IMG/VR virus record: IMGVR_UViG_3300043411_000921
Coordinates: 177,400 to 241,399 of that record
Strand: one strand, 5' to 3'
Length of the DNA stretch: 64,000 nucleotides
Below the pieces are notes generated by a model, which did not search any database, was not told the origin of the DNA, and worked only from the letters and a program-made list of their open reading frames with translations. This document shows, piece by piece, positions 51,040 to 64,000 of the stretch. How positions within the stretch are numbered: the stretch's first letter is position 1; each line of letters opens with the position of its first letter. A program made the position numbers and the translations under genes.

Positions 51040-52683
51040 ATGGCTCTTACAAAAAAAGAACAAGTAGAAGAAGTTTTGAAGTGTGGGAAGGATCCCATCT
51101 ACTTCATCAAGAACTACCTTTACATCCAACATCCGACCAAAGGAAGGCTTCCCTTCCGTCTCTACCCATTCCAAGAAGAGTGTATTGAATCCTTCCTGGA
51201 CTACAAATACAACATCGTTTTGAAGTCCAGACAGCTCGGTTTATCCACAACAACAGCAGCTTATTGTCTCTGGATGGCTCTCTTCCGACAAGATGCCAAC
51301 ATCCTTCTCATGGCAACAAAACTGGAAGTTGGAAAGGGAATGATCGAGAAGATCAGAACCGCTTTCAAAATGCTTCCAGCTTGGATGTTGAACCTGCTGG
51401 AGTTGAAGGTTCCTGATGCCGAGTCCGTGAAATATATCAAGTTCACAAACGGATCAAAAATCACCGCGATTCCAACCGCAAAAGATGCTGCTCGCGGAGA
51501 AGCTGTAACCCTGCTTGTTATTGACGAAGCAGCGCACATCGAAAATCTCGAAGAATTATGGATGGGTCTTTGGTCCACCGTTTCGACTGGAGGAAGGGCG
51601 ATTGTGTTCTCAACACCTAAAGGAAGAAACTACTTCCAGCAACTTTGGGTTGGGGCAGAAGTACCAGAATTGGAACCAAACAAGGTTGGACAAATTTGTA
51701 AAGGTGTTGGCAGGAACGGATTCCACGGCATCAAACTCCCCTGGTTCGTTCACCCAGAAAGAGATGATGAATGGTTTGATGCTCAGTCGAGAGCACTGGA
51801 CGCAAGAGGTGTTGCACAAGAACTTCTGTGCAGTTTTGAAGGATCCAGCCTCACCTTCTTCTCACAAACATCAATCGACTACGTTCGCAACCTCTCTTTT
51901 CCTCCTGTTGCTTTCACTGGGCCAGAAGGAAAGGGATTGGACTTGCAAATTTGGAAGAACGCTGAGGAAGGACATCAATATGTTTTGTCAGCAGACGTGG
52001 CTAGAGGCGACGCAGAGGATTATAGCGCCTTCCATGTCTTCGACATAACCAAGTCTGAGGTTGTGGCTGAATACCTTGGTAAAATTCCTCCTGATCGGTT
52101 TGGAGAGTGGCTAATCGAGGTTGGTAAGAAATACAACATGGCTCTGATCGTTGCTGAAAAGAACACGGTTGGAATTGCCACAGCAATCAAGCTTCGTGAT
52201 TCTGGGTACCCAAACCTTTACTACGACCAGGAATTGGCCAACAAGATGTTGACCATGACTCCAGACGAGAAAAAGGATTGTCTTCCAGGGTTTACAATCA
52301 CTCCCAAGAACAGAGAAAAGATTCTGGAGAACCTGGAACAAGTCATCAGGAACAATCACTTGAGGCTTTATTCCACAAGGTTTGTTTCAGAGATGGAATC
52401 ATTTATCTGGAATGGTAAGCGTGGGCAAGCACTCAAGAAACGACACGATGACTTGATCATGGCAATGGCCATTGGCTTGCAAGTTTTCACTCCCAATGCA
52501 GAGCAACAGAATTACTTTGATGTTTTGGCAGCAAACCAAGGATTGGCGAAGGCTATGCTAGCTGGGATGTCGAGAGGCGGTGGAAGTGGAAAGCTTGGTG
52601 GGAAGAAGGTTCCAAGTTTCGTGAACAAGGAGACTGTTCAACTGGAGATGCAATTCAGAAAAGAGTTCGGTTGGCTGTATTGA
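51040..52683 (+). CDS. terminase large subunit (T4 gp17-like)
   Basis: KC.KDPIYF, LYPFQ, KSRQLGLST, ARG, LVIDEAA, STPKG, DVARG..DYSA, EKN, HDDLIMA. Confidence 0.96.
   Translation: MALTKKEQVEEVLKCGKDPIYFIKNYLYIQHPTKGRLPFRLYPFQEECIESFLDYKYNIVLKSRQLGLSTTTAAYCLWMALFRQDANILLMATKLEVGKGMIEKIRTAFKMLPAWMLNLLELKVPDAESVKYIKFTNGSKITAIPTAKDAARGEAVTLLVIDEAAHIENLEELWMGLWSTVSTGGRAIVFSTPKGRNYFQQLWVGAEVPELEPNKVGQICKGVGRNGFHGIKLPWFVHPERDDEWFDAQSRALDARGVAQELLCSFEGSSLTFFSQTSIDYVRNLSFPPVAFTGPEGKGLDLQIWKNAEEGHQYVLSADVARGDAEDYSAFHVFDITKSEVVAEYLGKIPPDRFGEWLIEVGKKYNMALIVAEKNTVGIATAIKLRDSGYPNLYYDQELANKMLTMTPDEKKDCLPGFTITPKNREKILENLEQVIRNNHLRLYSTRFVSEMESFIWNGKRGQALKKRHDDLIMAMAIGLQVFTPNAEQQNYFDVLAANQGLAKAMLAGMSRGGGSGKLGGKKVPSFVNKETVQLEMQFRKEFGWLY
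52001..52105 (+). repeat. family A element, copy 12 (inside terminase)
   Basis: GCAGAGGATTAT-AGCGCCTTCC at 52012; AAAATTCC-TCCTGATCGGTTTGG at 52089 (offset 77). Confidence 0.5.
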
Positions 52684-55725: not shown

Positions 55726-56079
55726 CTAAGTATTATCCTTCACCTCCCGCATGAAACGATAAATCCCAGCTTTCTTTACATCTGTGGTTGCTGGATTCAC
55801 AATCCCGGTAAAAACCCAGCCAATCATCTGAGTCTCACAGACTAACACCTTCAAATAACTCAAGGTCTTCTTGGGAACTTCAACCAAAACAAACAGTTGT
55901 TTTGGTTTGAGGTAAACGACCATACTCCAGCGTTGATGTGGAAGACCTACAACCCTTCTTCCATGACGCGAACAAAGAAGAGGCCGTGCCGTGTCAGAGA
56001 CAAACTCATACAATCCACCAACCCGAACATCTACTTCTGGAATCTGAACCTTTTTACGAATCCGCTTGTTGTTTGACAT
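55726..56079 (-). CDS. hypothetical protein (SH3-like)
   Basis: ORF divergent from the sigma gene; start chosen at MSNNKR. Confidence 0.55.
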   Translation of the reverse strand: MSNNKRIRKKVQIPEVDVRVGGLYEFVSDTARPLLCSRHGRRVVGLPHQRWSMVVYLKPKQLFVLVEVPKKTLSYLKVLVCETQMIGWVFTGIVNPATTDVKKAGIYRFMREVKDNT

Positions 56080-56143
56080 TTCTCTTCTCAATGACTTGAA
56101 ACAATCTTATACAATGCTTACAGTTGCTTCTGGAGCAAGAATT

Positions 56144-56953
56144 ATGTCAATCCAGAGACGCAGAACCAAGAGATATCCAAACACCCCCAGGCCCAACAAC
56201 AAGGAAGATCATGAACTGTTTCTGAAATATCAAGGAACCAAAGTTCACAATGAGAATGGTAAACTCATCTCCTCAGACTTGAAGCTGAGGAATCAGCTAG
56301 CAGATCGTAATGCGAGGCTTGTGACTTTTATGGTCAACAAGTTTTACAGCCGCAAGAAGAAGCATCTCGAACTCAGAGACGATCTTCTTCAAGAAGGTCA
56401 CATTGGTTTGGTCCATGCTGTTGAAGGTTTCAAGCCTGAAATGGGAATCATGTTCAGCACTTATGCTGGAATTTGGATTCGGCAAGCTATCAAGACCTAC
56501 CTTCTGGAACACGATCCATTCATGCCCATTCCAGGACACGTCAGAACAGCCAACAACAAACTCGTTAAGCATTGCAAAGAAGTCGGCAAACCCACCGACA
56601 ATTTCTTCATTTTGACTGATGAGGAATTGGCAACCCTTGAAATCACAAAGAACATGGTTGATTGTGTTGAAGCAGCAAGAAAAACCGCAAAGACAAAAAC
56701 CGTGTTTGTTGATTTCTTCCAAGACCTGAGACCAAACTCGGAAGTTTCTGAAACGAGTTTTCTGAAAGGACTCCCAGCCGAGCAAGATGATCGGTTTATC
56801 AACAAGCGTCTTTTGCTGGCAGCGAAGAAGGCATTTACCCAACTTACTCTGAGAGAGCGTTGTGTTCTTCTGGAGAGGTATGGAATTGATTCCAGGCCAT
56901 ATTGGAATGGCGAAACAGTTTTGAGTGAAGAGGATAACGAGGTGACAAAATGA
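56144..56953 (+). CDS. sigma70-family RNA polymerase sigma factor lacking region 4.2
   Basis: RNQL...NARLV, DDLLQEG.IGL..AVE.F.PE.G..FSTYA.IWIRQAI, IPGH, LT.RER.VL..RYG. Confidence 0.88.
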   Translation: MSIQRRRTKRYPNTPRPNNKEDHELFLKYQGTKVHNENGKLISSDLKLRNQLADRNARLVTFMVNKFYSRKKKHLELRDDLLQEGHIGLVHAVEGFKPEMGIMFSTYAGIWIRQAIKTYLLEHDPFMPIPGHVRTANNKLVKHCKEVGKPTDNFFILTDEELATLEITKNMVDCVEAARKTAKTKTVFVDFFQDLRPNSEVSETSFLKGLPAEQDDRFINKRLLLAAKKAFTQLTLRERCVLLERYGIDSRPYWNGETVLSEEDNEVTK

Positions 56954-61044: not shown

Positions 61045-61129
61045 GGAAGAGTATCCTAATGGTAAGGAAACGGTTTGCTAAACCGTCGAGGGCTAACCCC
61101 TCTTGCGAGTTCGACTCTCGTCTCTTCCT
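61045..61129 (+). tRNA. tRNA-Ser(GCT)
   Basis: ACGGT-TTGCTAA-ACCGT, long variable arm, TTCGA. Confidence 0.9.
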
Positions 61130-61279
61130 CCGATGTTTTGTGTGTGGCTGTAAAATGGAACAGTTTCGCAACCCAACTGTAATGTGGGGTGTTGAAAATG
61201 TGGGCAGGAATAATAACTAAACCAACCCACCACACGAAATATCTCTCTGTCCCGGTATGCCGCCTCGTGTTTCTACATT

Positions 61280-61353
61280 CTCTCCATCGTCTAACTGGAT
61301 AAGGCTCTTGCCTTCTAAGCAAGTAATTGGGGGTTCGAATCCCTCTGGGGAGG
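61280..61353 (+). tRNA. tRNA-Arg(TCT)
   Basis: CTTGC-CTTCTAA-GCAAG; TTCGAAT. Confidence 0.9.
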
Positions 61354-61396
61354 CTAGCAACAAAGTTCTTGACAAGGAAAAAGTGACAGGGTAAAA

Positions 61397-61483
61397 GAGA
61401 AAGTGTCCCGAGTGGAAAGGGAGCAGCCTGCAAAGCTGAAGAGGATAAAATCCTCACCAAGAGTTCGATTCTCTTCTTTCTCT
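61397..61483 (+). tRNA. tRNA-Cys(GCA) with a long variable arm
   Basis: GCAGC-CTGCAAA-GCTGA; variable stem GAGGAT/ATCCTC; U73. Confidence 0.8.
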
Positions 61484-61488
61484 CTGAC

Positions 61489-61562
61489 AGTAGTATAGCT
61501 TATGGGTAAAGCCTCCCACCGATAATGGGAAGAAGAAGTTTCAAGCACTTCTACTACTACCA
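61489..61562 (+). tRNA. tRNA-Ile(GAT), C33
   Basis: TCCCA-CCGATAA-TGGGA; encoded CCA. Confidence 0.8.
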
Positions 61563-61564
61563 AC

Positions 61565-61635
61565 AACACCATAACTCAATGGTAGAGTTTCTGCTCGACG
61601 CGCAGAATATATCAGTTCGATTCTGATTGGTGTTA
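61565..61635 (+). tRNA. tRNA-Val(GAC), C33
   Basis: TCTGC-TCGACGC-GCAGA. Confidence 0.8.
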
Positions 61636-61675
61636 TCGTTTCTTCTGAATTTGCTTCATACATAAGCCTTACAAC

Positions 61676-61756
61676 GCCACTGTGGTGGAATGGCAGACAC
61701 CCCGGCTTCAAATCCCGGCGCTTTCGAGCATGTCGGTTCGACTCCGACCAGTGGCA
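61676..61756 (+). tRNA. tRNA-Leu(CAA)
   Basis: CCGGC-TTCAAAT-CCCGG (31-39 mismatch); Leu-type D arm, A73. Confidence 0.85.
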
Positions 61757-61814
61757 CTCAACAACAACAAAAGTGTTGACAGATAGAAAGAGTTAAGTTA
61801 AAGAGCAGACAGAC

Positions 61815-61902
61815 GGGATCGTGGTGGAACGGCAGACACGGCTGATTTAAGGTCAGAAGCATCATTATGATGCACTTGGGGGTTCGAGTCCCTCCGGTCC
61901 TA
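61815..61902 (+). tRNA. tRNA-Leu(TAA)
   Basis: GCTGA-TTTAAGG-TCAGA, long variable arm. Confidence 0.88.
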
Positions 61903-61936
61903 CTCAAGAAAGTCCTTGACAGACAAAACAAAAGAT

Positions 61937-62010
61937 GGCACAGTAGCCCAATCGGCAGAGGCAATGGTTCGAGAAGCCATCTAGTGAGAGTTCAAATCTC
62001 TTCTGAACCA
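61937..62010 (+). tRNA. tRNA-Leu(GAG), short variable loop, C33, acceptor mismatches
   Basis: ATGGT-TCGAGAA-GCCAT. Confidence 0.65.
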
Positions 62011-62063
62011 CTGATAGAAACAAAGATAGAAGAAGGTAGTTAGAATAGTAACGGTAGTATCAT

Positions 62064-62141
62064 CGGGGATCGGACTCAAGGCGGGTCGCCTGTTTTGGAA
62101 ACAGGACATTCAGGCAGGTTCAATTCCTGCATCCCCGACCA
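62064..62141 (+). tRNA. tRNA-Pro(TGG), A37
   Basis: CCTGT-TTTGGAA-ACAGG; CGGGGAT/ATCCCCG; ACCA. Confidence 0.85.
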
Positions 62142-62196
62142 AACTTCTCACAGCGCCTCAGTTGTGAATCGTTCTTTGAAAACTTGTGTTGAATTA

Positions 62197-62283
62197 GGAA
62201 GGGCAAGCCGATGGGCGACGGCGCCGGTCTTGAAAACCGTGTGACCAGTAATGGTCTTGTGAGTTCGACTCTCACCCCTTCCG
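62197..62283 (+). tRNA. tRNA-Ser(TGA)
   Basis: CGGT-CTTGAAA-ACCG, long variable arm, G73. Confidence 0.9.
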
Positions 62284-62284
62284 C

Positions 62285-62357
62285 CGCGGGATCGTCTAAC
62301 GGTTTAGGACACAGGGCTCATACCCCTGAAATCTTGGTTCGATTCCTTGTCCCGCGA
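62285..62357 (+). tRNA. tRNA-Met(CAT), initiator-like anticodon stem
   Basis: CAGGG-CTCATAC-CCCTG; C1-G72 paired; T-stem mismatches. Confidence 0.75.
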
Positions 62358-62360
62358 TCT

Positions 62361-62446
62361 GGATCGTCTGTTCTATGGTAGAACAGTTGACTGTAAATCA
62401 ACCGGCCCAACAGGCTAAGCAAGTTCGATTCTTGTCTGATCCACCA
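62361..62446 (+). tRNA. tRNA-Tyr(GTA)
   Basis: GTTGA-CTGTAAA-TCAAC, variable arm, ACCA. Confidence 0.85.
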
Positions 62447-62448
62447 GA

Positions 62449-62521
62449 CACTCTTGTATCTTCACCGGCAGAAGACGCGCTTGCCGCGCAGGGGTAGTTG
62501 GTTCAATTCCAACCAGAGTGT
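62449..62521 (+). pseudogene. degenerate tRNA-Gly(GCC)-like gene
   Basis: Good T arm and D stem; anticodon stem poorly paired; bulged acceptor stem. Confidence 0.5.
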
Positions 62522-62666
62522 CTTTTGATAATCCAACAGGAGGAGTTGCAACTTGTTCAATCCGCAAATAGGGTTGACTTTGCGATGGAGAGGAGTAGCT
62601 AACCTCAAACCTCCAGGAAACTATCCTCATACCAGGACGCTGGACGAAGGAACAGTTTCCGATTTT

Positions 62667-62742
62667 GCCCACTTAGCTCAATTGGCAGAGCACCTGACCT
62701 GTAATCAGGCGGTTGTCCGTTCAACTCGGATAGTGGGCTCCA
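62667..62742 (+). tRNA. tRNA-Thr(TGT), C33
   Basis: CCTGA-CCTGTAA-TCAGG; TCCA end. Confidence 0.85.
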
Positions 62743-62743
62743 C

Positions 62744-62814
62744 AGGTCGGTAGTGCAAAGGCAGCACACTGGTTTCCAACTCCAGAAATAAAGGTTCGAG
62801 TCCTTTCCTTCCTG
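62744..62814 (+). tRNA. tRNA-Trp(CCA)
   Basis: CTGGT-TTCCAAC-TCCAG; G73; acceptor mismatches. Confidence 0.75.
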
Positions 62815-62933
62815 CCGTCTCTCGATGAACACAACGAGGTAAAACTTGTTGGTGAGTGGAGGTTGCAAACTCCTAAAAGTTCATGAAAACACACAGTCCC
62901 GGCAAAGATCTGTGCAATGGTATGTGTGTATTT

Positions 62934-63005
62934 GGTCCCATCGTCCAGTGGTTAGGACACTTGATTTTCAATCAAGGAATATGAGTTCAATTCTCATTGG
63001 GATCA
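62934..63005 (+). tRNA. tRNA-Glu(TTC)
   Basis: CTTGA-TTTTCAA-TCAAG. Confidence 0.88.
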
Positions 63006-63018
63006 TAAGTTTGAAAAT

Positions 63019-63091
63019 GTCTGTTGAGGCTGTCGGATAAAACCGCTGGGCTACGAACCCGGAATGCGTGGTTCAACTCCACGAACAGACG
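63019..63091 (+). tRNA. tRNA-Arg(ACG)
   Basis: CTGGG-CTACGAA-CCCGG; atypical D arm. Confidence 0.75.
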
Positions 63092-63100
63092 TTAGTTTTT

Positions 63101-63171
63101 GCCCTCATCGTTCAATGGTAGGACAGCAGATTGTCGATCTGCATACAGGAGTTCCATTCTCCTTGGGGGCG
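63101..63171 (+). tRNA. tRNA-Asp(GTC)
   Basis: GCAGA-TTGTCGA-TCTGC; G73. Confidence 0.85.
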
Positions 63172-63198
63172 CTTAGGTTTCTTCTGGTTGGAATGGTA

Positions 63199-63498
63199 GT
63201 CGTAGGGCAATTTCCTAGTAGTCACCCCAAAACATCCGAAACACTTGTTTCGAGTTATGCAAGGGGCACGAAAAGAAAAACGGGTAGCCCCCTCAAATCC
63301 ACTTATTTGTGGGCTGTTTGAGAGAACAGAGAAAAGTGTGAGATGAAACTTCTCATCTTGAACAAAGCACCTTTTTCGAATGGTGTTGAAACACACGCAA
63401 GTTTGTTTCGCAAGCGGTGTAGGGGATATGGCCTGAAAACCATTTTGAAACCCGAGCACATTCTCCAGGTGCAGGTTCGAATCCTGCCGATGACTCCA
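63199..63498 (+). ncRNA. candidate structured RNA ending in a tRNA-like T arm and CCA
   Basis: GCAGG-TTCGAAT-CCTGC-CGATGAC-T-CCA at 63471-63498; possible 5' partner GTCGTAG at 63199; internal hairpins. Confidence 0.35.
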
Positions 63499-63513
63499 GC
63501 CAGAAGAAATCTC

Positions 63514-63542
63514 TTGACTGTCTTTTCTTGGTGTGGTAGCTT
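63514..63542 (+). promoter_or_regulatory. sigma70-type promoter for the next tRNA block
   Basis: TTGACT-N17-TAGCTT with TG extension. Confidence 0.65.
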
Positions 63543-63564
63543 AGGTCTTGTCAGTGAGTGAGAT

Positions 63565-63638
63565 TCGGGATTAGCTCAATGGTAGAGCGATCGGCTTTGA
63601 CCCGGTTGACGTAGGTTCGATTCCTTCATCCCGAACCA
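63565..63638 (+). tRNA. tRNA-Gln(TTG)
   Basis: ATCGG-CTTTGAC-CCGGT; ACCA. Confidence 0.88.
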
Positions 63639-63639
63639 T

Positions 63640-63712
63640 GAATCCATAGCTCAATTGGCAGAGCATGACTCTCTTAAAGTCGAGGTTTCGAGTTCGACTC
63701 TCGATGGATTCA
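63640..63712 (+). tRNA. tRNA-Lys(CTT)
   Basis: TGACT-CTCTTAA-AGTCG. Confidence 0.9.
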
Positions 63713-63734
63713 CTTGATAGTTGTTTGTATGAAT

Positions 63735-63807
63735 GGAACCATAGCTCAGTTGGTAGAGCGTTGGCCTGAAGAGCCAAGCGTCGAAGGTTCGACCCCTTCT
63801 GGTTCCA
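63735..63807 (+). tRNA. tRNA-Phe(GAA)
   Basis: TTGGC-CTGAAGA-GCCAA. Confidence 0.92.
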
Positions 63808-63815
63808 CTTTGTTT

Positions 63816-63890
63816 GCAGCAATAGCTCAATGGTAGAGTTCCTCTTTTCCAAAGAGGGTGTTGTGGGTTCGAATCCCATTTGCTGCTCCA
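63816..63890 (+). tRNA. tRNA-Gly(TCC)
   Basis: CCTCT-TTTCCAA-AGAGG; U73-CCA. Confidence 0.92.
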
Positions 63891-63893
63891 TGA

Positions 63894-63962
63894 TAAGCCA
63901 TAGCTCAATGGTAGAGTTCCGCCGCGAAGGCGGAGATACGGGTTCGAATCCCGTTGGTTTTA
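63894..63962 (+). tRNA. tRNA-like gene with a 5-nt anticodon loop (identity undetermined)
   Basis: Canonical D and T arms; CCGCC-GCGAA-GGCGG. Confidence 0.65.
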
Positions 63963-63978
63963 TCATTTGATTGTTTGC

Positions 63979-64000
63979 GGGGTCATAACTCAGCGTTGGC
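63979..64000 (+). tRNA. 5' fragment of a tRNA (Ala-like), cut by the window end
   Basis: GGGGTCA-TA-ACTCAG start. Confidence 0.5.

What the first reader, a model, noticed from the sequence alone, without database searches (positions are those of the whole stretch)
61489..62742. Repeated loss of the near-invariant U33 in four tRNAs
Seen: Ile(GAT), Val(GAC), Leu(GAG) and Thr(TGT) all have C33 with intact anticodon stems. Other oddities include A37 in Pro, G37 in Val and Asp, and 31-39 mismatches in Leu(CAA) and Trp. Four independent hits at one position suggest selection or C-to-U editing over random decay. Inference: escape from host anticodon nucleases.
Basis: partly seen in the sequence, partly recalled or inferred. 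Interest (0 to 1): 0.6.

Follow-up and report, generated by a model that had tools for sequence, protein, structure and literature searches.

The report
Phage tRNAs that keep C33
Four transfer RNA genes in this phage's large tRNA cluster carry C instead of the almost universal U before the anticodon. The change is conserved and recurs in many unrelated viruses, mostly in tRNA-Val(GAC) and tRNA-Ile(GAU), but is not found in sampled cellular genomes, so it looks like an undescribed virus-associated tRNA variant rather than decay.

Summary
Ile(GAU), Val(GAC), a class-I 'Leu'(GAG) and Thr(UGU) have C33 at window 61520, 61596, 61970 and 62699, in well-formed tRNAs.

Five related phage genomes keep C33 in Ile, Val, Leu(GAG) and a fifth tRNA, Asn(GUU), which lies beyond the contig end. 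Thr keeps it in four of the five. These genes are 99-100% identical where spacers are about 81%, so they are selected genes, not decay.

The wider pattern is new:
- **Viral contigs:** C33 occurs in 23/78 Val(GAC) and 18/80 Ile(GAU) genes of one sequence class.
- **Controls:** it occurs in 1/77 Phe(GAA) genes and about 4% of other viral tRNAs.
- **Cellular genomes:** 0 of 61 Val(GAC) matches and 0 of 400 genomes for Ile(GAU).
- **Form and spread:** non-U33 is almost always C, with many independent origins, in otherwise canonical tRNAs.

Function is unproven. Most likely (about 0.4) C33 keeps decoding but removes the uridine that loop-directed host nucleases or modifying enzymes use. Nearly as likely (about 0.33) it is a tolerated pyrimidine swap in accessory tRNAs. 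C-to-U editing finds no support.

The parts
61045..64000 (+). tRNA gene array: 22 complete genes plus the 5' end of a 23rd, cut off by the end of the 241-kb contig
   Evidence: ARAGORN; Rfam. Relatives have 30-35 tRNAs in the same array.
61489..61562 (+). tRNA-Ile(GAU), loop CCGATAA, C33 at 61520. Encoded CCA. T stem closes with U53-A61 instead of G53-C61.
   Evidence: (55.1 bits). Identical or 1 nt different in L052, L053 and L070. Replaced by 15- and 22-nt-different alleles in L076 and L071 that also have C33.
61565..61635 (+). tRNA-Val(GAC), loop TCGACGC, C33 at 61596, G37 at 61600, C38
   Evidence: (61.2 bits). 0-1 nt different in all five relatives.
61937..62011 (+). Class-I (75 nt, short variable loop) tRNA with anticodon GAG, loop TCGAGAA, C33 at 61970. 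In this genome it is a recombinant whose 5' acceptor strand comes from the neighbouring CAG paralogue, giving C3.A70 and A4.A69 mismatches.
   Evidence: (45.8 bits). Relatives have a perfect acceptor stem and a separate Leu(CAG) gene that is missing here.
62667..62742 (+). tRNA-Thr(UGU), loop CCTGTAA, C32 and C33 at 62698-62699, encoded CCA
   Evidence: (61.5 bits). Identical in four relatives. L071 differs only at 32-33 (TT). RNA-library contigs keep C.
63894..63962 (+). 69-nt tRNA-like gene called Ser(CGA) but class I, loop CGCGAAG with G33 at 63924. It sits in a slot whose 'anticodon' is hypervariable among relatives.
   Evidence: (52.1 bits)
62064..62141 (+). tRNA-Pro(UGG) with A37 (62099) where bacterial Pro tRNAs have G37
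   Evidence: The same loop is in all relatives.
63101..63172 (+). tRNA-Asp(GUC) with G37 (63136)
   Evidence: The same loop is in all relatives.
61676..61757 (+). tRNA-Leu(CAA) with a C.C mismatch at 31-39
   Evidence: Replaced by a different, perfectly paired Leu(CAA) in L053, L070, L071 and L076.
62744..62816 (+). tRNA-Trp(CCA) with U.U at 31-39
   Evidence: Conserved in relatives.

Best explanation
These are working phage tRNA genes in which C33 is a maintained variant typical of viral and mobile-element tRNAs, not a lesion.

**Shown.** The genes are under strong purifying selection. C33 is kept across diverged relatives and across replaced alleles. The same change recurs many times in unrelated viruses, chiefly in Val(GAC) and Ile(GAU). 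It is not found in the sampled cellular genomes. The replacement is almost always the other pyrimidine.

**Inferred mechanism.** C at 33 still allows the anticodon loop to decode. Yeast tRNA-Leu(GAG) naturally has C33 at little cost, and a few bacteria have C33 in their rRNA-operon tRNA-Ile. But C33 removes the uridine that host enzymes acting on this side of the loop use. U-specific HEPN-type RNases cut after U33; Cas13b6 excises U33 of tRNA-Val(GAC). E. coli TsaBCDE failed to put t6A on a U33C tRNA. TGT reads U33-G34-U35 (my own knowledge).

The phage would thus keep a private pool of Ile, Val, Leu, Thr and Asn decoders that stays intact or unmodified when the host's own tRNAs are attacked during infection.
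For: **Real and well formed.**

**Conserved in the clade.**
- In five related genomes from separate assemblies, C33 is kept in Ile, Val, Leu(GAG) and Asn(GUU) in all, and in Thr in four.
- Ile, Val, Thr and Asn differ by 0-1 nt between the window (for Asn, its closest relative L052) and L053, where array spacers are 81% identical and neighbouring proteins 58-92%.
- Three Ile(GAU) alleles, down to 66% identity and with two different anticodon stems, all read CCGATAA.

**Recurrent in viruses.**
- Val(GAC): 23/78 C33, with 22 different anticodon stems.
- Ile(GAU), pattern class: 18/80, with 16 different stems.
- Same-design Phe(GAA) control: 1/77.
- Other viral tRNAs: about 3.7%.
- Named isolates: Synechococcus phage S-CRM01 (Ile, Val, Pro) and Vibrio phage EniLVp02 (Ile) also have C33.

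**Many origins.** 13 state changes on the Ile tree and 19 on the Val tree.

**Cellular baseline.** The C33 Ile pattern is in 0/400 genomes, where the U33 pattern is in 37/60. Cellular Val(GAC) is 0/61.

**Not decay.** Non-U33 is C in 60 of 67 unselected cases. C33 tRNAs have no more stem mismatches or broken T- or D-loop motifs than U33 ones.

**Context of attack on tRNAs.** The genome encodes a T4 Rnl1-family RNA ligase and a Pnk-like kinase, plus its own MnmA.

**Literature.** PMC10264068 (phage tRNA loop changes evade nucleases), PMC13692257 (Cas13b6 cuts after U and excises U33 of tRNA-Val GAC), PMC11724271 (CdiA-CT EC536 cuts tRNA-Ile GAU between C32 and U33), PMC8887486 (C33 blocks t6A by E. 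coli enzymes), PMC13492127 (yeast tL(GAG) C33 is functional).
Against: - No nuclease, host or defence system is identified.
- Val and Leu keep U32, so a nuclease that cuts after any loop U would still cut.
- No known widespread system prefers Val(GAC) or Ile(GAU).
- PARIS, which hits Thr(UGU) and Asn(GUU), cuts at 40/41, not near 33 (PMC12409363).
- Gamma-toxin is indifferent to U33C (PMC2275089).
- A TsaBD-tRNA structure sees no base-specific contact to U33 (PMC13276492), so the t6A effect is disputed.
- C33 in Ile or Val does not predict C33 in other tRNAs of the same viral locus (3.7 against 3.4%), which argues against one host-wide pressure.
- Conservation inside the clade cannot separate 'favoured' from 'neutral between C and U', because one site over 19% divergence is expected to stay unchanged anyway.
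- L071 carries a U32 U33 Thr gene that is otherwise identical.
- Among Ile(GAU) genes not picked by my pattern, only 1 of 35 has C33, so the Ile hot spot applies to one sequence class.
- No expression or charging data exist for Ile, Val or Leu(GAG).
Confidence: 0.4

Rival explanations
1. Tolerated pyrimidine swap. In tRNAs with G34-A35 anticodons such as GAC, GAU and GAG, C33 costs very little. In accessory (phage, array) tRNAs that back up a host copy, selection for U33 is relaxed. C33 therefore drifts in and out while the rest of the tRNA stays under selection. It has no adaptive role.
For: - Yeast tL(GAG) has C33 with minimal functional effect (PMC13492127).
- Some bacteria have C33 in the rRNA-operon tRNA-Ile(GAU), in two cases as the only copy found.
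- The C33 state flips often on the trees (13 and 19 changes).
- L071's Thr gene is the U32 U33 form of an otherwise identical gene.
- C33 is tRNA-family specific rather than genome-wide.
- Only pyrimidines appear, as expected if just the turn geometry is constrained.
- A general 4% C33 level across all viral tRNA families suits relaxed constraint.
Against: - Phe(GAA), also G34-A35, shows 1/77.
- Cellular genomes show 0/400 and 0/61, so U33 is under real selection in the same tRNA classes.
- The window's C33 tRNAs are among the most conserved genes of the array, while neighbours such as Arg UCU, Leu CAA, Tyr, Gly and Lys were replaced.
- Two independent Ile anticodon arms in this clade both have C33, chance about 0.05 at a 22% pool frequency.
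- In Val(GAC), C33 goes with C38 (odds ratio 9.6, p 3e-5), which suggests a co-adapted loop.
Confidence: 0.33
2. Decoding tuning. C33, together with position 38 and sometimes 32, adjusts how the loop sits on the ribosome. This could change affinity or the balance between C-ending and U-ending codons read by G34 tRNAs, to suit phage codon usage.
For: - Positions 33 and 38 are associated in viral Val(GAC).
- Thr shows a paired 32-33 change (CC against TT) and nothing else in 76 nt.
- Other loop oddities are conserved in the same array: A37 in Pro, G37 in Val and Asp.
- The phage encodes its own MnmA, so it invests in anticodon-loop chemistry.
Against: - No direct evidence that C33 changes wobble reading.
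- The yeast C33U swap had almost no effect (PMC13492127).
- Cellular U33 Val(GAC) also carries C38 in about a quarter of matches.
- The test of the 33-38 link on independent tree pairs had too few supported pairs.
Confidence: 0.12
3. The genomic C33 is deaminated to U33 in the RNA, restoring a normal loop.
For: The genome has a divergent zinc deaminase (HAE...PCPMC) next to mnmA.
Against: - Contigs from two RNA libraries cover Thr with C at 62699, though DNA carry-over or precursor RNA cannot be excluded.
- The deaminase is also present (57% identity) in relative G003, whose 14 tRNAs are all U33.
- Its PHROG matches are to dCMP deaminases.
- To my knowledge, no C-to-U tRNA editing is known in bacteria or phages.
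Confidence: 0.03
4. The C33 genes are decaying pseudogenes.
For: The window's Leu(GAG) copy has two acceptor-stem mismatches from a recombination. The window's Ile allele has U53-A61.
Against: - 99-100% identity of Ile, Val, Thr and Asn where spacers are 81%.
- All score 45-62 bits against RF00005.
- Relatives' Leu(GAG) has a perfect acceptor stem.
- C33 tRNAs in viruses are as canonical as U33 ones.
Confidence: 0.03

Closest known systems
Phage tRNAs whose anticodon-arm substitutions escape host tRNases. Examples: mycobacteriophage tRNAs against VapC (van den Berg 2023, PMC10264068), T5 tRNA-Lys/Thr/Asn against PARIS AriB (PMC12409363), T5 tRNA-Tyr against Retron-Eco7 (PMC11555353).
   Same: These are phage-encoded, otherwise canonical tRNAs that differ from cellular cognates at a few anticodon-arm positions and lie in a large array. 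The phage also carries tRNA-repair-type enzymes.
   Different: The change is at the U-turn nucleotide 33 itself, which those studies do not report. It recurs in specific families (Val GAC, Ile GAU) across unrelated viruses. No matching nuclease is known, and resistance is untested.
Natural C33 tRNAs of eukaryotes: initiator tRNA-Met of multicellular organisms (PMC8887486) and S. cerevisiae tRNA-Leu(GAG) (PMC13492127)
   Same: C33 sits in a normal 7-nt loop of a functional tRNA. The yeast case shares the GAG anticodon with one of the window's four tRNAs and is likewise a non-essential, redundant decoder.
   Different: They belong to a different domain and are not homologous. In initiators, C33 relates to initiation. 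Neither is linked to conflict with nucleases.
tRNA gene arrays of bacteria and large phages (for example T5, S-CRM01, KVP40-like phages)
   Same: This is a dense run of 30-35 tRNA genes covering nearly all amino acids, interspersed with tRNA-like RNAs of unknown role; T5 has annotated tRNA-like stable RNAs. In the genome collection, C33 Ile(GAU) genes lie mostly in such arrays.
   Different: The literature I could search does not describe position-33 variation in arrays.
T4 PrrC / Rnl1-Pnkp conflict
   Same: The genome encodes a T4 Rnl1-family ligase and a Pnk-like kinase, the tool kit T4 uses to mend anticodon-loop breaks made 5' of the wobble base, that is after U33.
   Different: The ligase scores below the NCBIfam equivalog cut-off. 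No phosphatase domain was found. PrrC targets tRNA-Lys, which here has U33.

Membership tests
Canonical elongator tRNA (Rfam RF00005) | Cloverleaf with 7/3-4/5/5-bp stems and a score above the gathering threshold | tested here: met
   45.8-61.5 bits against a 29-bit threshold. The only broken pairs are C3.A70 and A4.A69 in the window's Leu(GAG).
Canonical elongator tRNA (Rfam RF00005) | U at position 33 | tested here: not met
   C at 61520, 61596, 61970 and 62699
Canonical elongator tRNA (Rfam RF00005) | T loop TTCRA closed by G53-C61; GG in the D loop | tested here: met
   Met for Val, Thr and Leu(GAG). Ile has TTCAA but U53-A61.
Nuclease-evading phage tRNAs | Encoded by a phage | tested here: met
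   The record is a 241-kb viral contig with a large terminase at 51040-52683.
Nuclease-evading phage tRNAs | Anticodon-arm base differs from the cellular cognate at a position the nuclease needs | tested here: inconclusive
   It differs from all sampled cellular Ile(GAU) and Val(GAC) genes at 33. Host and nuclease are unknown.
Nuclease-evading phage tRNAs | The phage tRNA resists cleavage and rescues infection | not testable with these tools
   Needs cleavage and infection assays.
C-to-U edited tRNAs | Genomic C read as U in the RNA | tested here: inconclusive
   RNA-library contigs keep C at 62699. They may be DNA or precursor, and there is no cover of Ile, Val or Leu(GAG).
C-to-U edited tRNAs | A deaminase that co-occurs with the C33 genes | tested here: not met
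   The deaminase is also in G003, whose tRNAs are all U33.
tRNA pseudogenes | Evolve at the neutral rate and accumulate broken stems and motifs | tested here: not met
   0-1 differences per gene where spacers are 81% identical. Viral C33 tRNAs average 0.88 stem mismatches against 1.18 for U33.
Bacterial tRNA-Leu | Class II shape with a long variable arm | tested here: not met
   The GAG (and, in relatives, CAG) tRNAs are 74-75 nt with a 5-nt variable loop and A73. Which amino acid they carry is unknown.

The most novel reading that the evidence does not exclude
C33 marks a widespread class of viral tRNAs, above all Val(GAC) and Ile(GAU), that evolved repeatedly to resist a common, still uncharacterised host attack reading or cutting at U33 of these particular tRNAs. 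The U-turn uridine would then be a battleground between phages and bacteria.
Probability: 0.3. Interest if true: 0.85.

Novelty: new variant of a known kind. Interest (0 to 1): 0.66.

Why it matters
U33 is treated as a near-invariant nucleotide of all tRNAs, and what phage tRNAs are for is a long-standing question.

Here U33 is replaced by C in about a quarter of viral Val(GAC) genes and of one class of Ile(GAU) genes. It was never replaced in the sampled cellular genomes.

This gives a simple sequence marker that separates viral from cellular versions of the same tRNA. It also gives a precise, cheap experiment: swap one base in a cultured phage such as S-CRM01 or EniLVp02, or in a stem-loop substrate. 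That would test whether phage tRNAs are shaped by host tRNA-targeting immunity, by modification enzymes, or by relaxed constraint.

It may also help tRNA annotation, since C33 should not be taken as a pseudogene sign in phages. It may point to unknown nucleases specific for Val and Ile tRNAs.

Tried and rejected
- **Close named relatives.** No phage in the GenBank phage collection is close by DNA. The best terminase match is 40%. Relatives came from IMG/VR, Logan and one NCBI assembly.
- **PARIS link for Thr and Asn.** AriB cuts at 40/41, not near 33.
- **Deaminase as C33 editor.** Rejected because it is also in an all-U33 relative. It has no NCBIfam or PDB sequence match.
- **RtcB and CCA-adding enzyme.** Not found in the genome.
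- **Genome-wide pressure.** C33 counts per viral locus are only weakly over-dispersed (p 0.03 by one measure, 0.47 by another). C33 in Ile or Val does not raise C33 elsewhere on the locus.
- **Ile-Val co-occurrence.** With 2, 1, 5 and 17 loci in the four classes, the sample is too small.
- **33-38 coupling on independent tree pairs.** Only 2 supported pairs, so underpowered.
- **Sigma-70 promoters in the array.** None by the scan. The spacer motif YTTGACWG is not enriched in the window.
- **The TTGACA idea.** U33 Val(GAC) spells a -35 box. Dropped, because cellular Val(GAC) genes carry it too.
- **RNA evidence.** Only Logan contigs were available. They cannot show expression level, ends or strand, and do not cover Ile, Val or Leu(GAG).
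- **Prior reports.** I found no paper describing C33 in phage tRNAs. Absence from that library is not proof of novelty.
- **Ile frequency caveat.** My Ile pattern catches only about 1 in 10 viral Ile(GAU) genes. Among 35 Ile(GAU) genes not selected by it, 1 has C33.
Full report
**What is there.** The window is the last 64 kb of a 241,399-bp viral contig with 45.7% G+C. From 61045 to the contig end it carries a + strand array of 22 complete tRNA genes and the first 21 bases of another. All 22 reach Rfam's tRNA gathering score. A large-terminase gene lies at 51040-52683 and a sigma-factor-like gene at 56066-56953. No named phage is close: there is no DNA match, and the best terminase identity is 40% to a Flavobacterium phage and 39% to a Microcystis phage. 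Runs that hold the sequence are freshwater, wastewater and marine-plankton metagenomes. The host is unknown.

**The observation.** Reading positions 32-38 directly:
- Ile(GAU) has CCGATAA, with C33 at 61520.
- Val(GAC) has TCGACGC, with C33 at 61596 and G37.
- The GAG tRNA has TCGAGAA, with C33 at 61970.
- Thr(UGU) has CCTGTAA, with C33 at 62699.

The anticodon stems are intact.

Several further points emerged. A 69-nt tRNA-like gene at 63894-63962 has G33. The GAG tRNA is class I, not the class II shape of bacterial tRNA-Leu. In this genome it is a recombinant that took the 5' acceptor strand of the adjacent CAG paralogue, deleting that gene and leaving two acceptor mismatches.

**Relatives.** Terminase and a conserved 234-aa neighbour led to five related genomes with the same array:
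- two IMG/VR contigs (L052, L053);
- two Logan contigs (L070, L071);
- one contig in an NCBI assembly (L076).

Their arrays hold 30-35 tRNAs, so the window's contig breaks inside the array. C33 is kept in Ile, Val and the GAG tRNA in all five, and in a fifth tRNA, Asn(GUU) (CCGTTAA), that lies beyond the window's end. Thr keeps it in four; L071 has TT at 32-33 and no other difference in 76 nt.

Between the window and L053 the array spacers are 81% identical and neighbouring proteins 58-92%. Yet Ile, Val and Thr differ by 0-1 nt, and so does Asn between L052 and L053. Other tRNAs of the array (Arg UCU, Leu CAA, Tyr, Gly UCC, Lys CUU, His) differ by 10-24 nt or were replaced.

The Ile gene exists as three alleles that share parts mosaically. 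They are down to 66% identical and have two different anticodon stems, and all read CCGATAA.

More distant relatives, with terminase identity of 62-82%, have fewer tRNAs, all with U33. One at 45% has C33 in a Pro(UGG) and a Thr(GGU).

Together these results show selected, working genes and rule out decay.

**How unusual is C33 in viruses?** I first looked at arrays of five named phages. Synechococcus phage S-CRM01 has C33 in Ile(GAU), Val(GAC) and Pro(UGG). Vibrio phage EniLVp02 has it in Ile(GAU). T5, phiAS5 and Slicko01 have none.

I then scanned IMG/VR with patterns that leave position 33 as Y and checked every hit with ARAGORN.

| tRNA class (same pattern design) | C33 | Distinct anticodon stems | After 90% dereplication (C-only / U-only / mixed) |
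|---|---|---|---|
| Ile(GAU) | 18 of 80 | 16 | 19 / 71 / 1 |
| Val(GAC) | 23 of 78 | 22 | 23 / 49 / 1 |
| Phe(GAA), control | 1 of 77 | - | - |

These figures come; the stem and dereplication counts include a few further Ile and Val genes found on loci fetched in the other scan.

All other tRNAs on the same loci show C33 in about 3.7-4.5% and A or G in about 0.5%.

There is one caveat. The Ile pattern catches only about a tenth of viral Ile(GAU) genes. Among 35 Ile(GAU) genes that were not selected by it, one has C33. The Ile hot spot therefore holds for the class with the bacterial-type D arm, not necessarily for all. Unselected Val(GAC) genes gave 2 of 8.

On trees built without the loop, the C33 state changes about 13 times for Ile and 19 times for Val, close to shuffled labels. 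It has therefore arisen or reverted many times.

C33 tRNAs are as canonical as U33 ones in stem pairing, T loop, G53-C61, D-loop GG and discriminator.

**Cells.** In 400 genomes drawn evenly from one bacterial phylum, the C33 Ile pattern was not found. The U33 pattern was in 37 of 60. All 61 cellular Val(GAC) matches in 58 of 61 genomes had U33.

A scan of one genome per species did find C33 Ile(GAU) genes (50 true ones in the 80 loci returned). Most lie in dense tRNA arrays of 9-31 genes per 8 kb. A few are the tRNA of the 16S-23S spacer in Bdellovibrionales, Verrucomicrobiota, Stahlbacteria and one gammaproteobacterial MAG, in two cases the only copy matched. So C33 can serve a cell's essential tRNA-Ile, but this is rare.

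**What it does.** The sequence data show selection on the genes and a virus-linked, family-specific, pyrimidine-only change. They do not show the benefit.

*Points for evasion of host enzymes.*
- The idea is established for other loop positions (PMC10264068, PMC12409363).
- U-specific HEPN nucleases cut after loop uridines, and Cas13b6 excises U33 of tRNA-Val(GAC) (PMC13692257).
- CdiA-CT EC536 cuts tRNA-Ile(GAU) between C32 and U33 (PMC11724271).
- E. coli TsaBCDE did not modify a U33C tRNA (PMC8887486).
- This phage carries an Rnl1-type ligase, a Pnk-like kinase and its own MnmA.

*Points against.*
- U32 remains in Val and Leu.
- No known system prefers Val or Ile tRNAs.
- C33 is not concentrated in particular genomes.
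- A structural study sees no base contact to U33 in TsaBD (PMC13276492).

*The near-neutral reading.* Yeast tL(GAG) tolerates C33 (PMC13492127). The state flips often, and clade conservation of one site cannot tell neutral from favoured. However, this reading must explain why Phe(GAA) is spared and why cells never show C33. It must also explain why C33 goes with C38 in viral Val(GAC) (odds ratio 9.6).

I put evasion at about 0.4, neutrality at about 0.33 and decoding tuning at about 0.12.

Editing gets about 0.03. RNA-library contigs keep C at Thr-33, and the deaminase next to mnmA is also in an all-U33 relative. Pseudogenes also get about 0.03.

**Novelty.** Phage tRNAs with altered anticodon arms are a known kind. 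A recurrent replacement of the U-turn uridine, focused on Val(GAC) and Ile(GAU) and absent from sampled cells, is not described in the papers I could search. I file it as a new variant of a known kind.

The window itself is one good example. Cultured carriers (S-CRM01, EniLVp02) make the question directly testable.

Noticed in passing
window 61937-62011 (and the missing gene before it): The window's GAG tRNA is a recombinant. Its first five bases come from the neighbouring CAG paralogue, which all five relatives still have and the window lacks. The result is two acceptor-stem mismatches.
   Followed up: yes
window 61397-61484: The 'tRNA-Cys(GCA)' is 88 nt with a 5-bp long variable arm (class II shape) and U73, which is unusual for a Cys tRNA. 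It is kept in L052, L071 and L076 and absent in L053 and L070.
   Followed up: partly
window 63894-63962; same slot in L053, L070, L071, L076: A tRNA-like gene has C32 G33 and a hypervariable 'anticodon' among close relatives (CGA, AAA, CGA, CGG). The role is unknown. T5 has annotated tRNA-like stable RNAs in its array too.
   Followed up: partly
window 63980-64000; L052 4300-4371, L070 9817-9890: The gene cut by the contig end is, in relatives, a tRNA with a 6-nt anticodon loop (ttcaaa or ttaaaa). Another array member has an 8-nt loop (ct GTTT gg), like a four-base decoder.
   Followed up: partly
window 61489-61562: The window's Ile(GAU) allele closes its T stem with U53-A61 instead of the near-invariant G53-C61. 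The alleles in L071 and L076 have G53-C61.
   Followed up: partly
G000 contig about 45756-47715 (locus L322 1757-3716, - strand): The phage encodes a full MnmA (tRNA 2-thiouridine-34 synthase, above the equivalog cut-off). Directly beside it is a divergent zinc deaminase (HAE...PCPMC) with no NCBIfam or PDB sequence match.
   Followed up: partly
G000 contig about 33346-34482 and 37232-37768 (locus L321): A T4 Rnl1-family RNA ligase and an AAA_33 kinase with weak likeness to polynucleotide kinases lie here, with an Amidoligase_2 protein between them. This may be a tRNA-repair set.
   Followed up: partly
L071 5516-5591: The Thr(UGU) gene of this relative differs from the window's at exactly positions 32 and 33 (CC to TT) and nowhere else in 76 nt.
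   Followed up: yes
L208, L265, L273, L279 (bacterial MAG contigs): In some bacteria the tRNA-Ile(GAU) of the 16S-23S spacer has C33. In two genomes it is the only copy matched. One gammaproteobacterial MAG has three U33 copies and one C33 copy.
   Followed up: partly
viral Val(GAC) genes, loci L324-L400: C33 goes with C38 (15 of 25) and U33 with U38. In cells, U33 forms carry either base at 38.
   Followed up: partly
window 62448-62521 and about 63469-63499: There are tRNA-like remnants between array members: a weak tRNA-Sec-model hit (20.7 bits) and a T arm plus acceptor 3' strand ending in CCA.
   Followed up: no
L013 8349-8721: A distant relative (45% terminase identity) carries a tmRNA gene next to an array of 32 tRNAs.
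   Followed up: no
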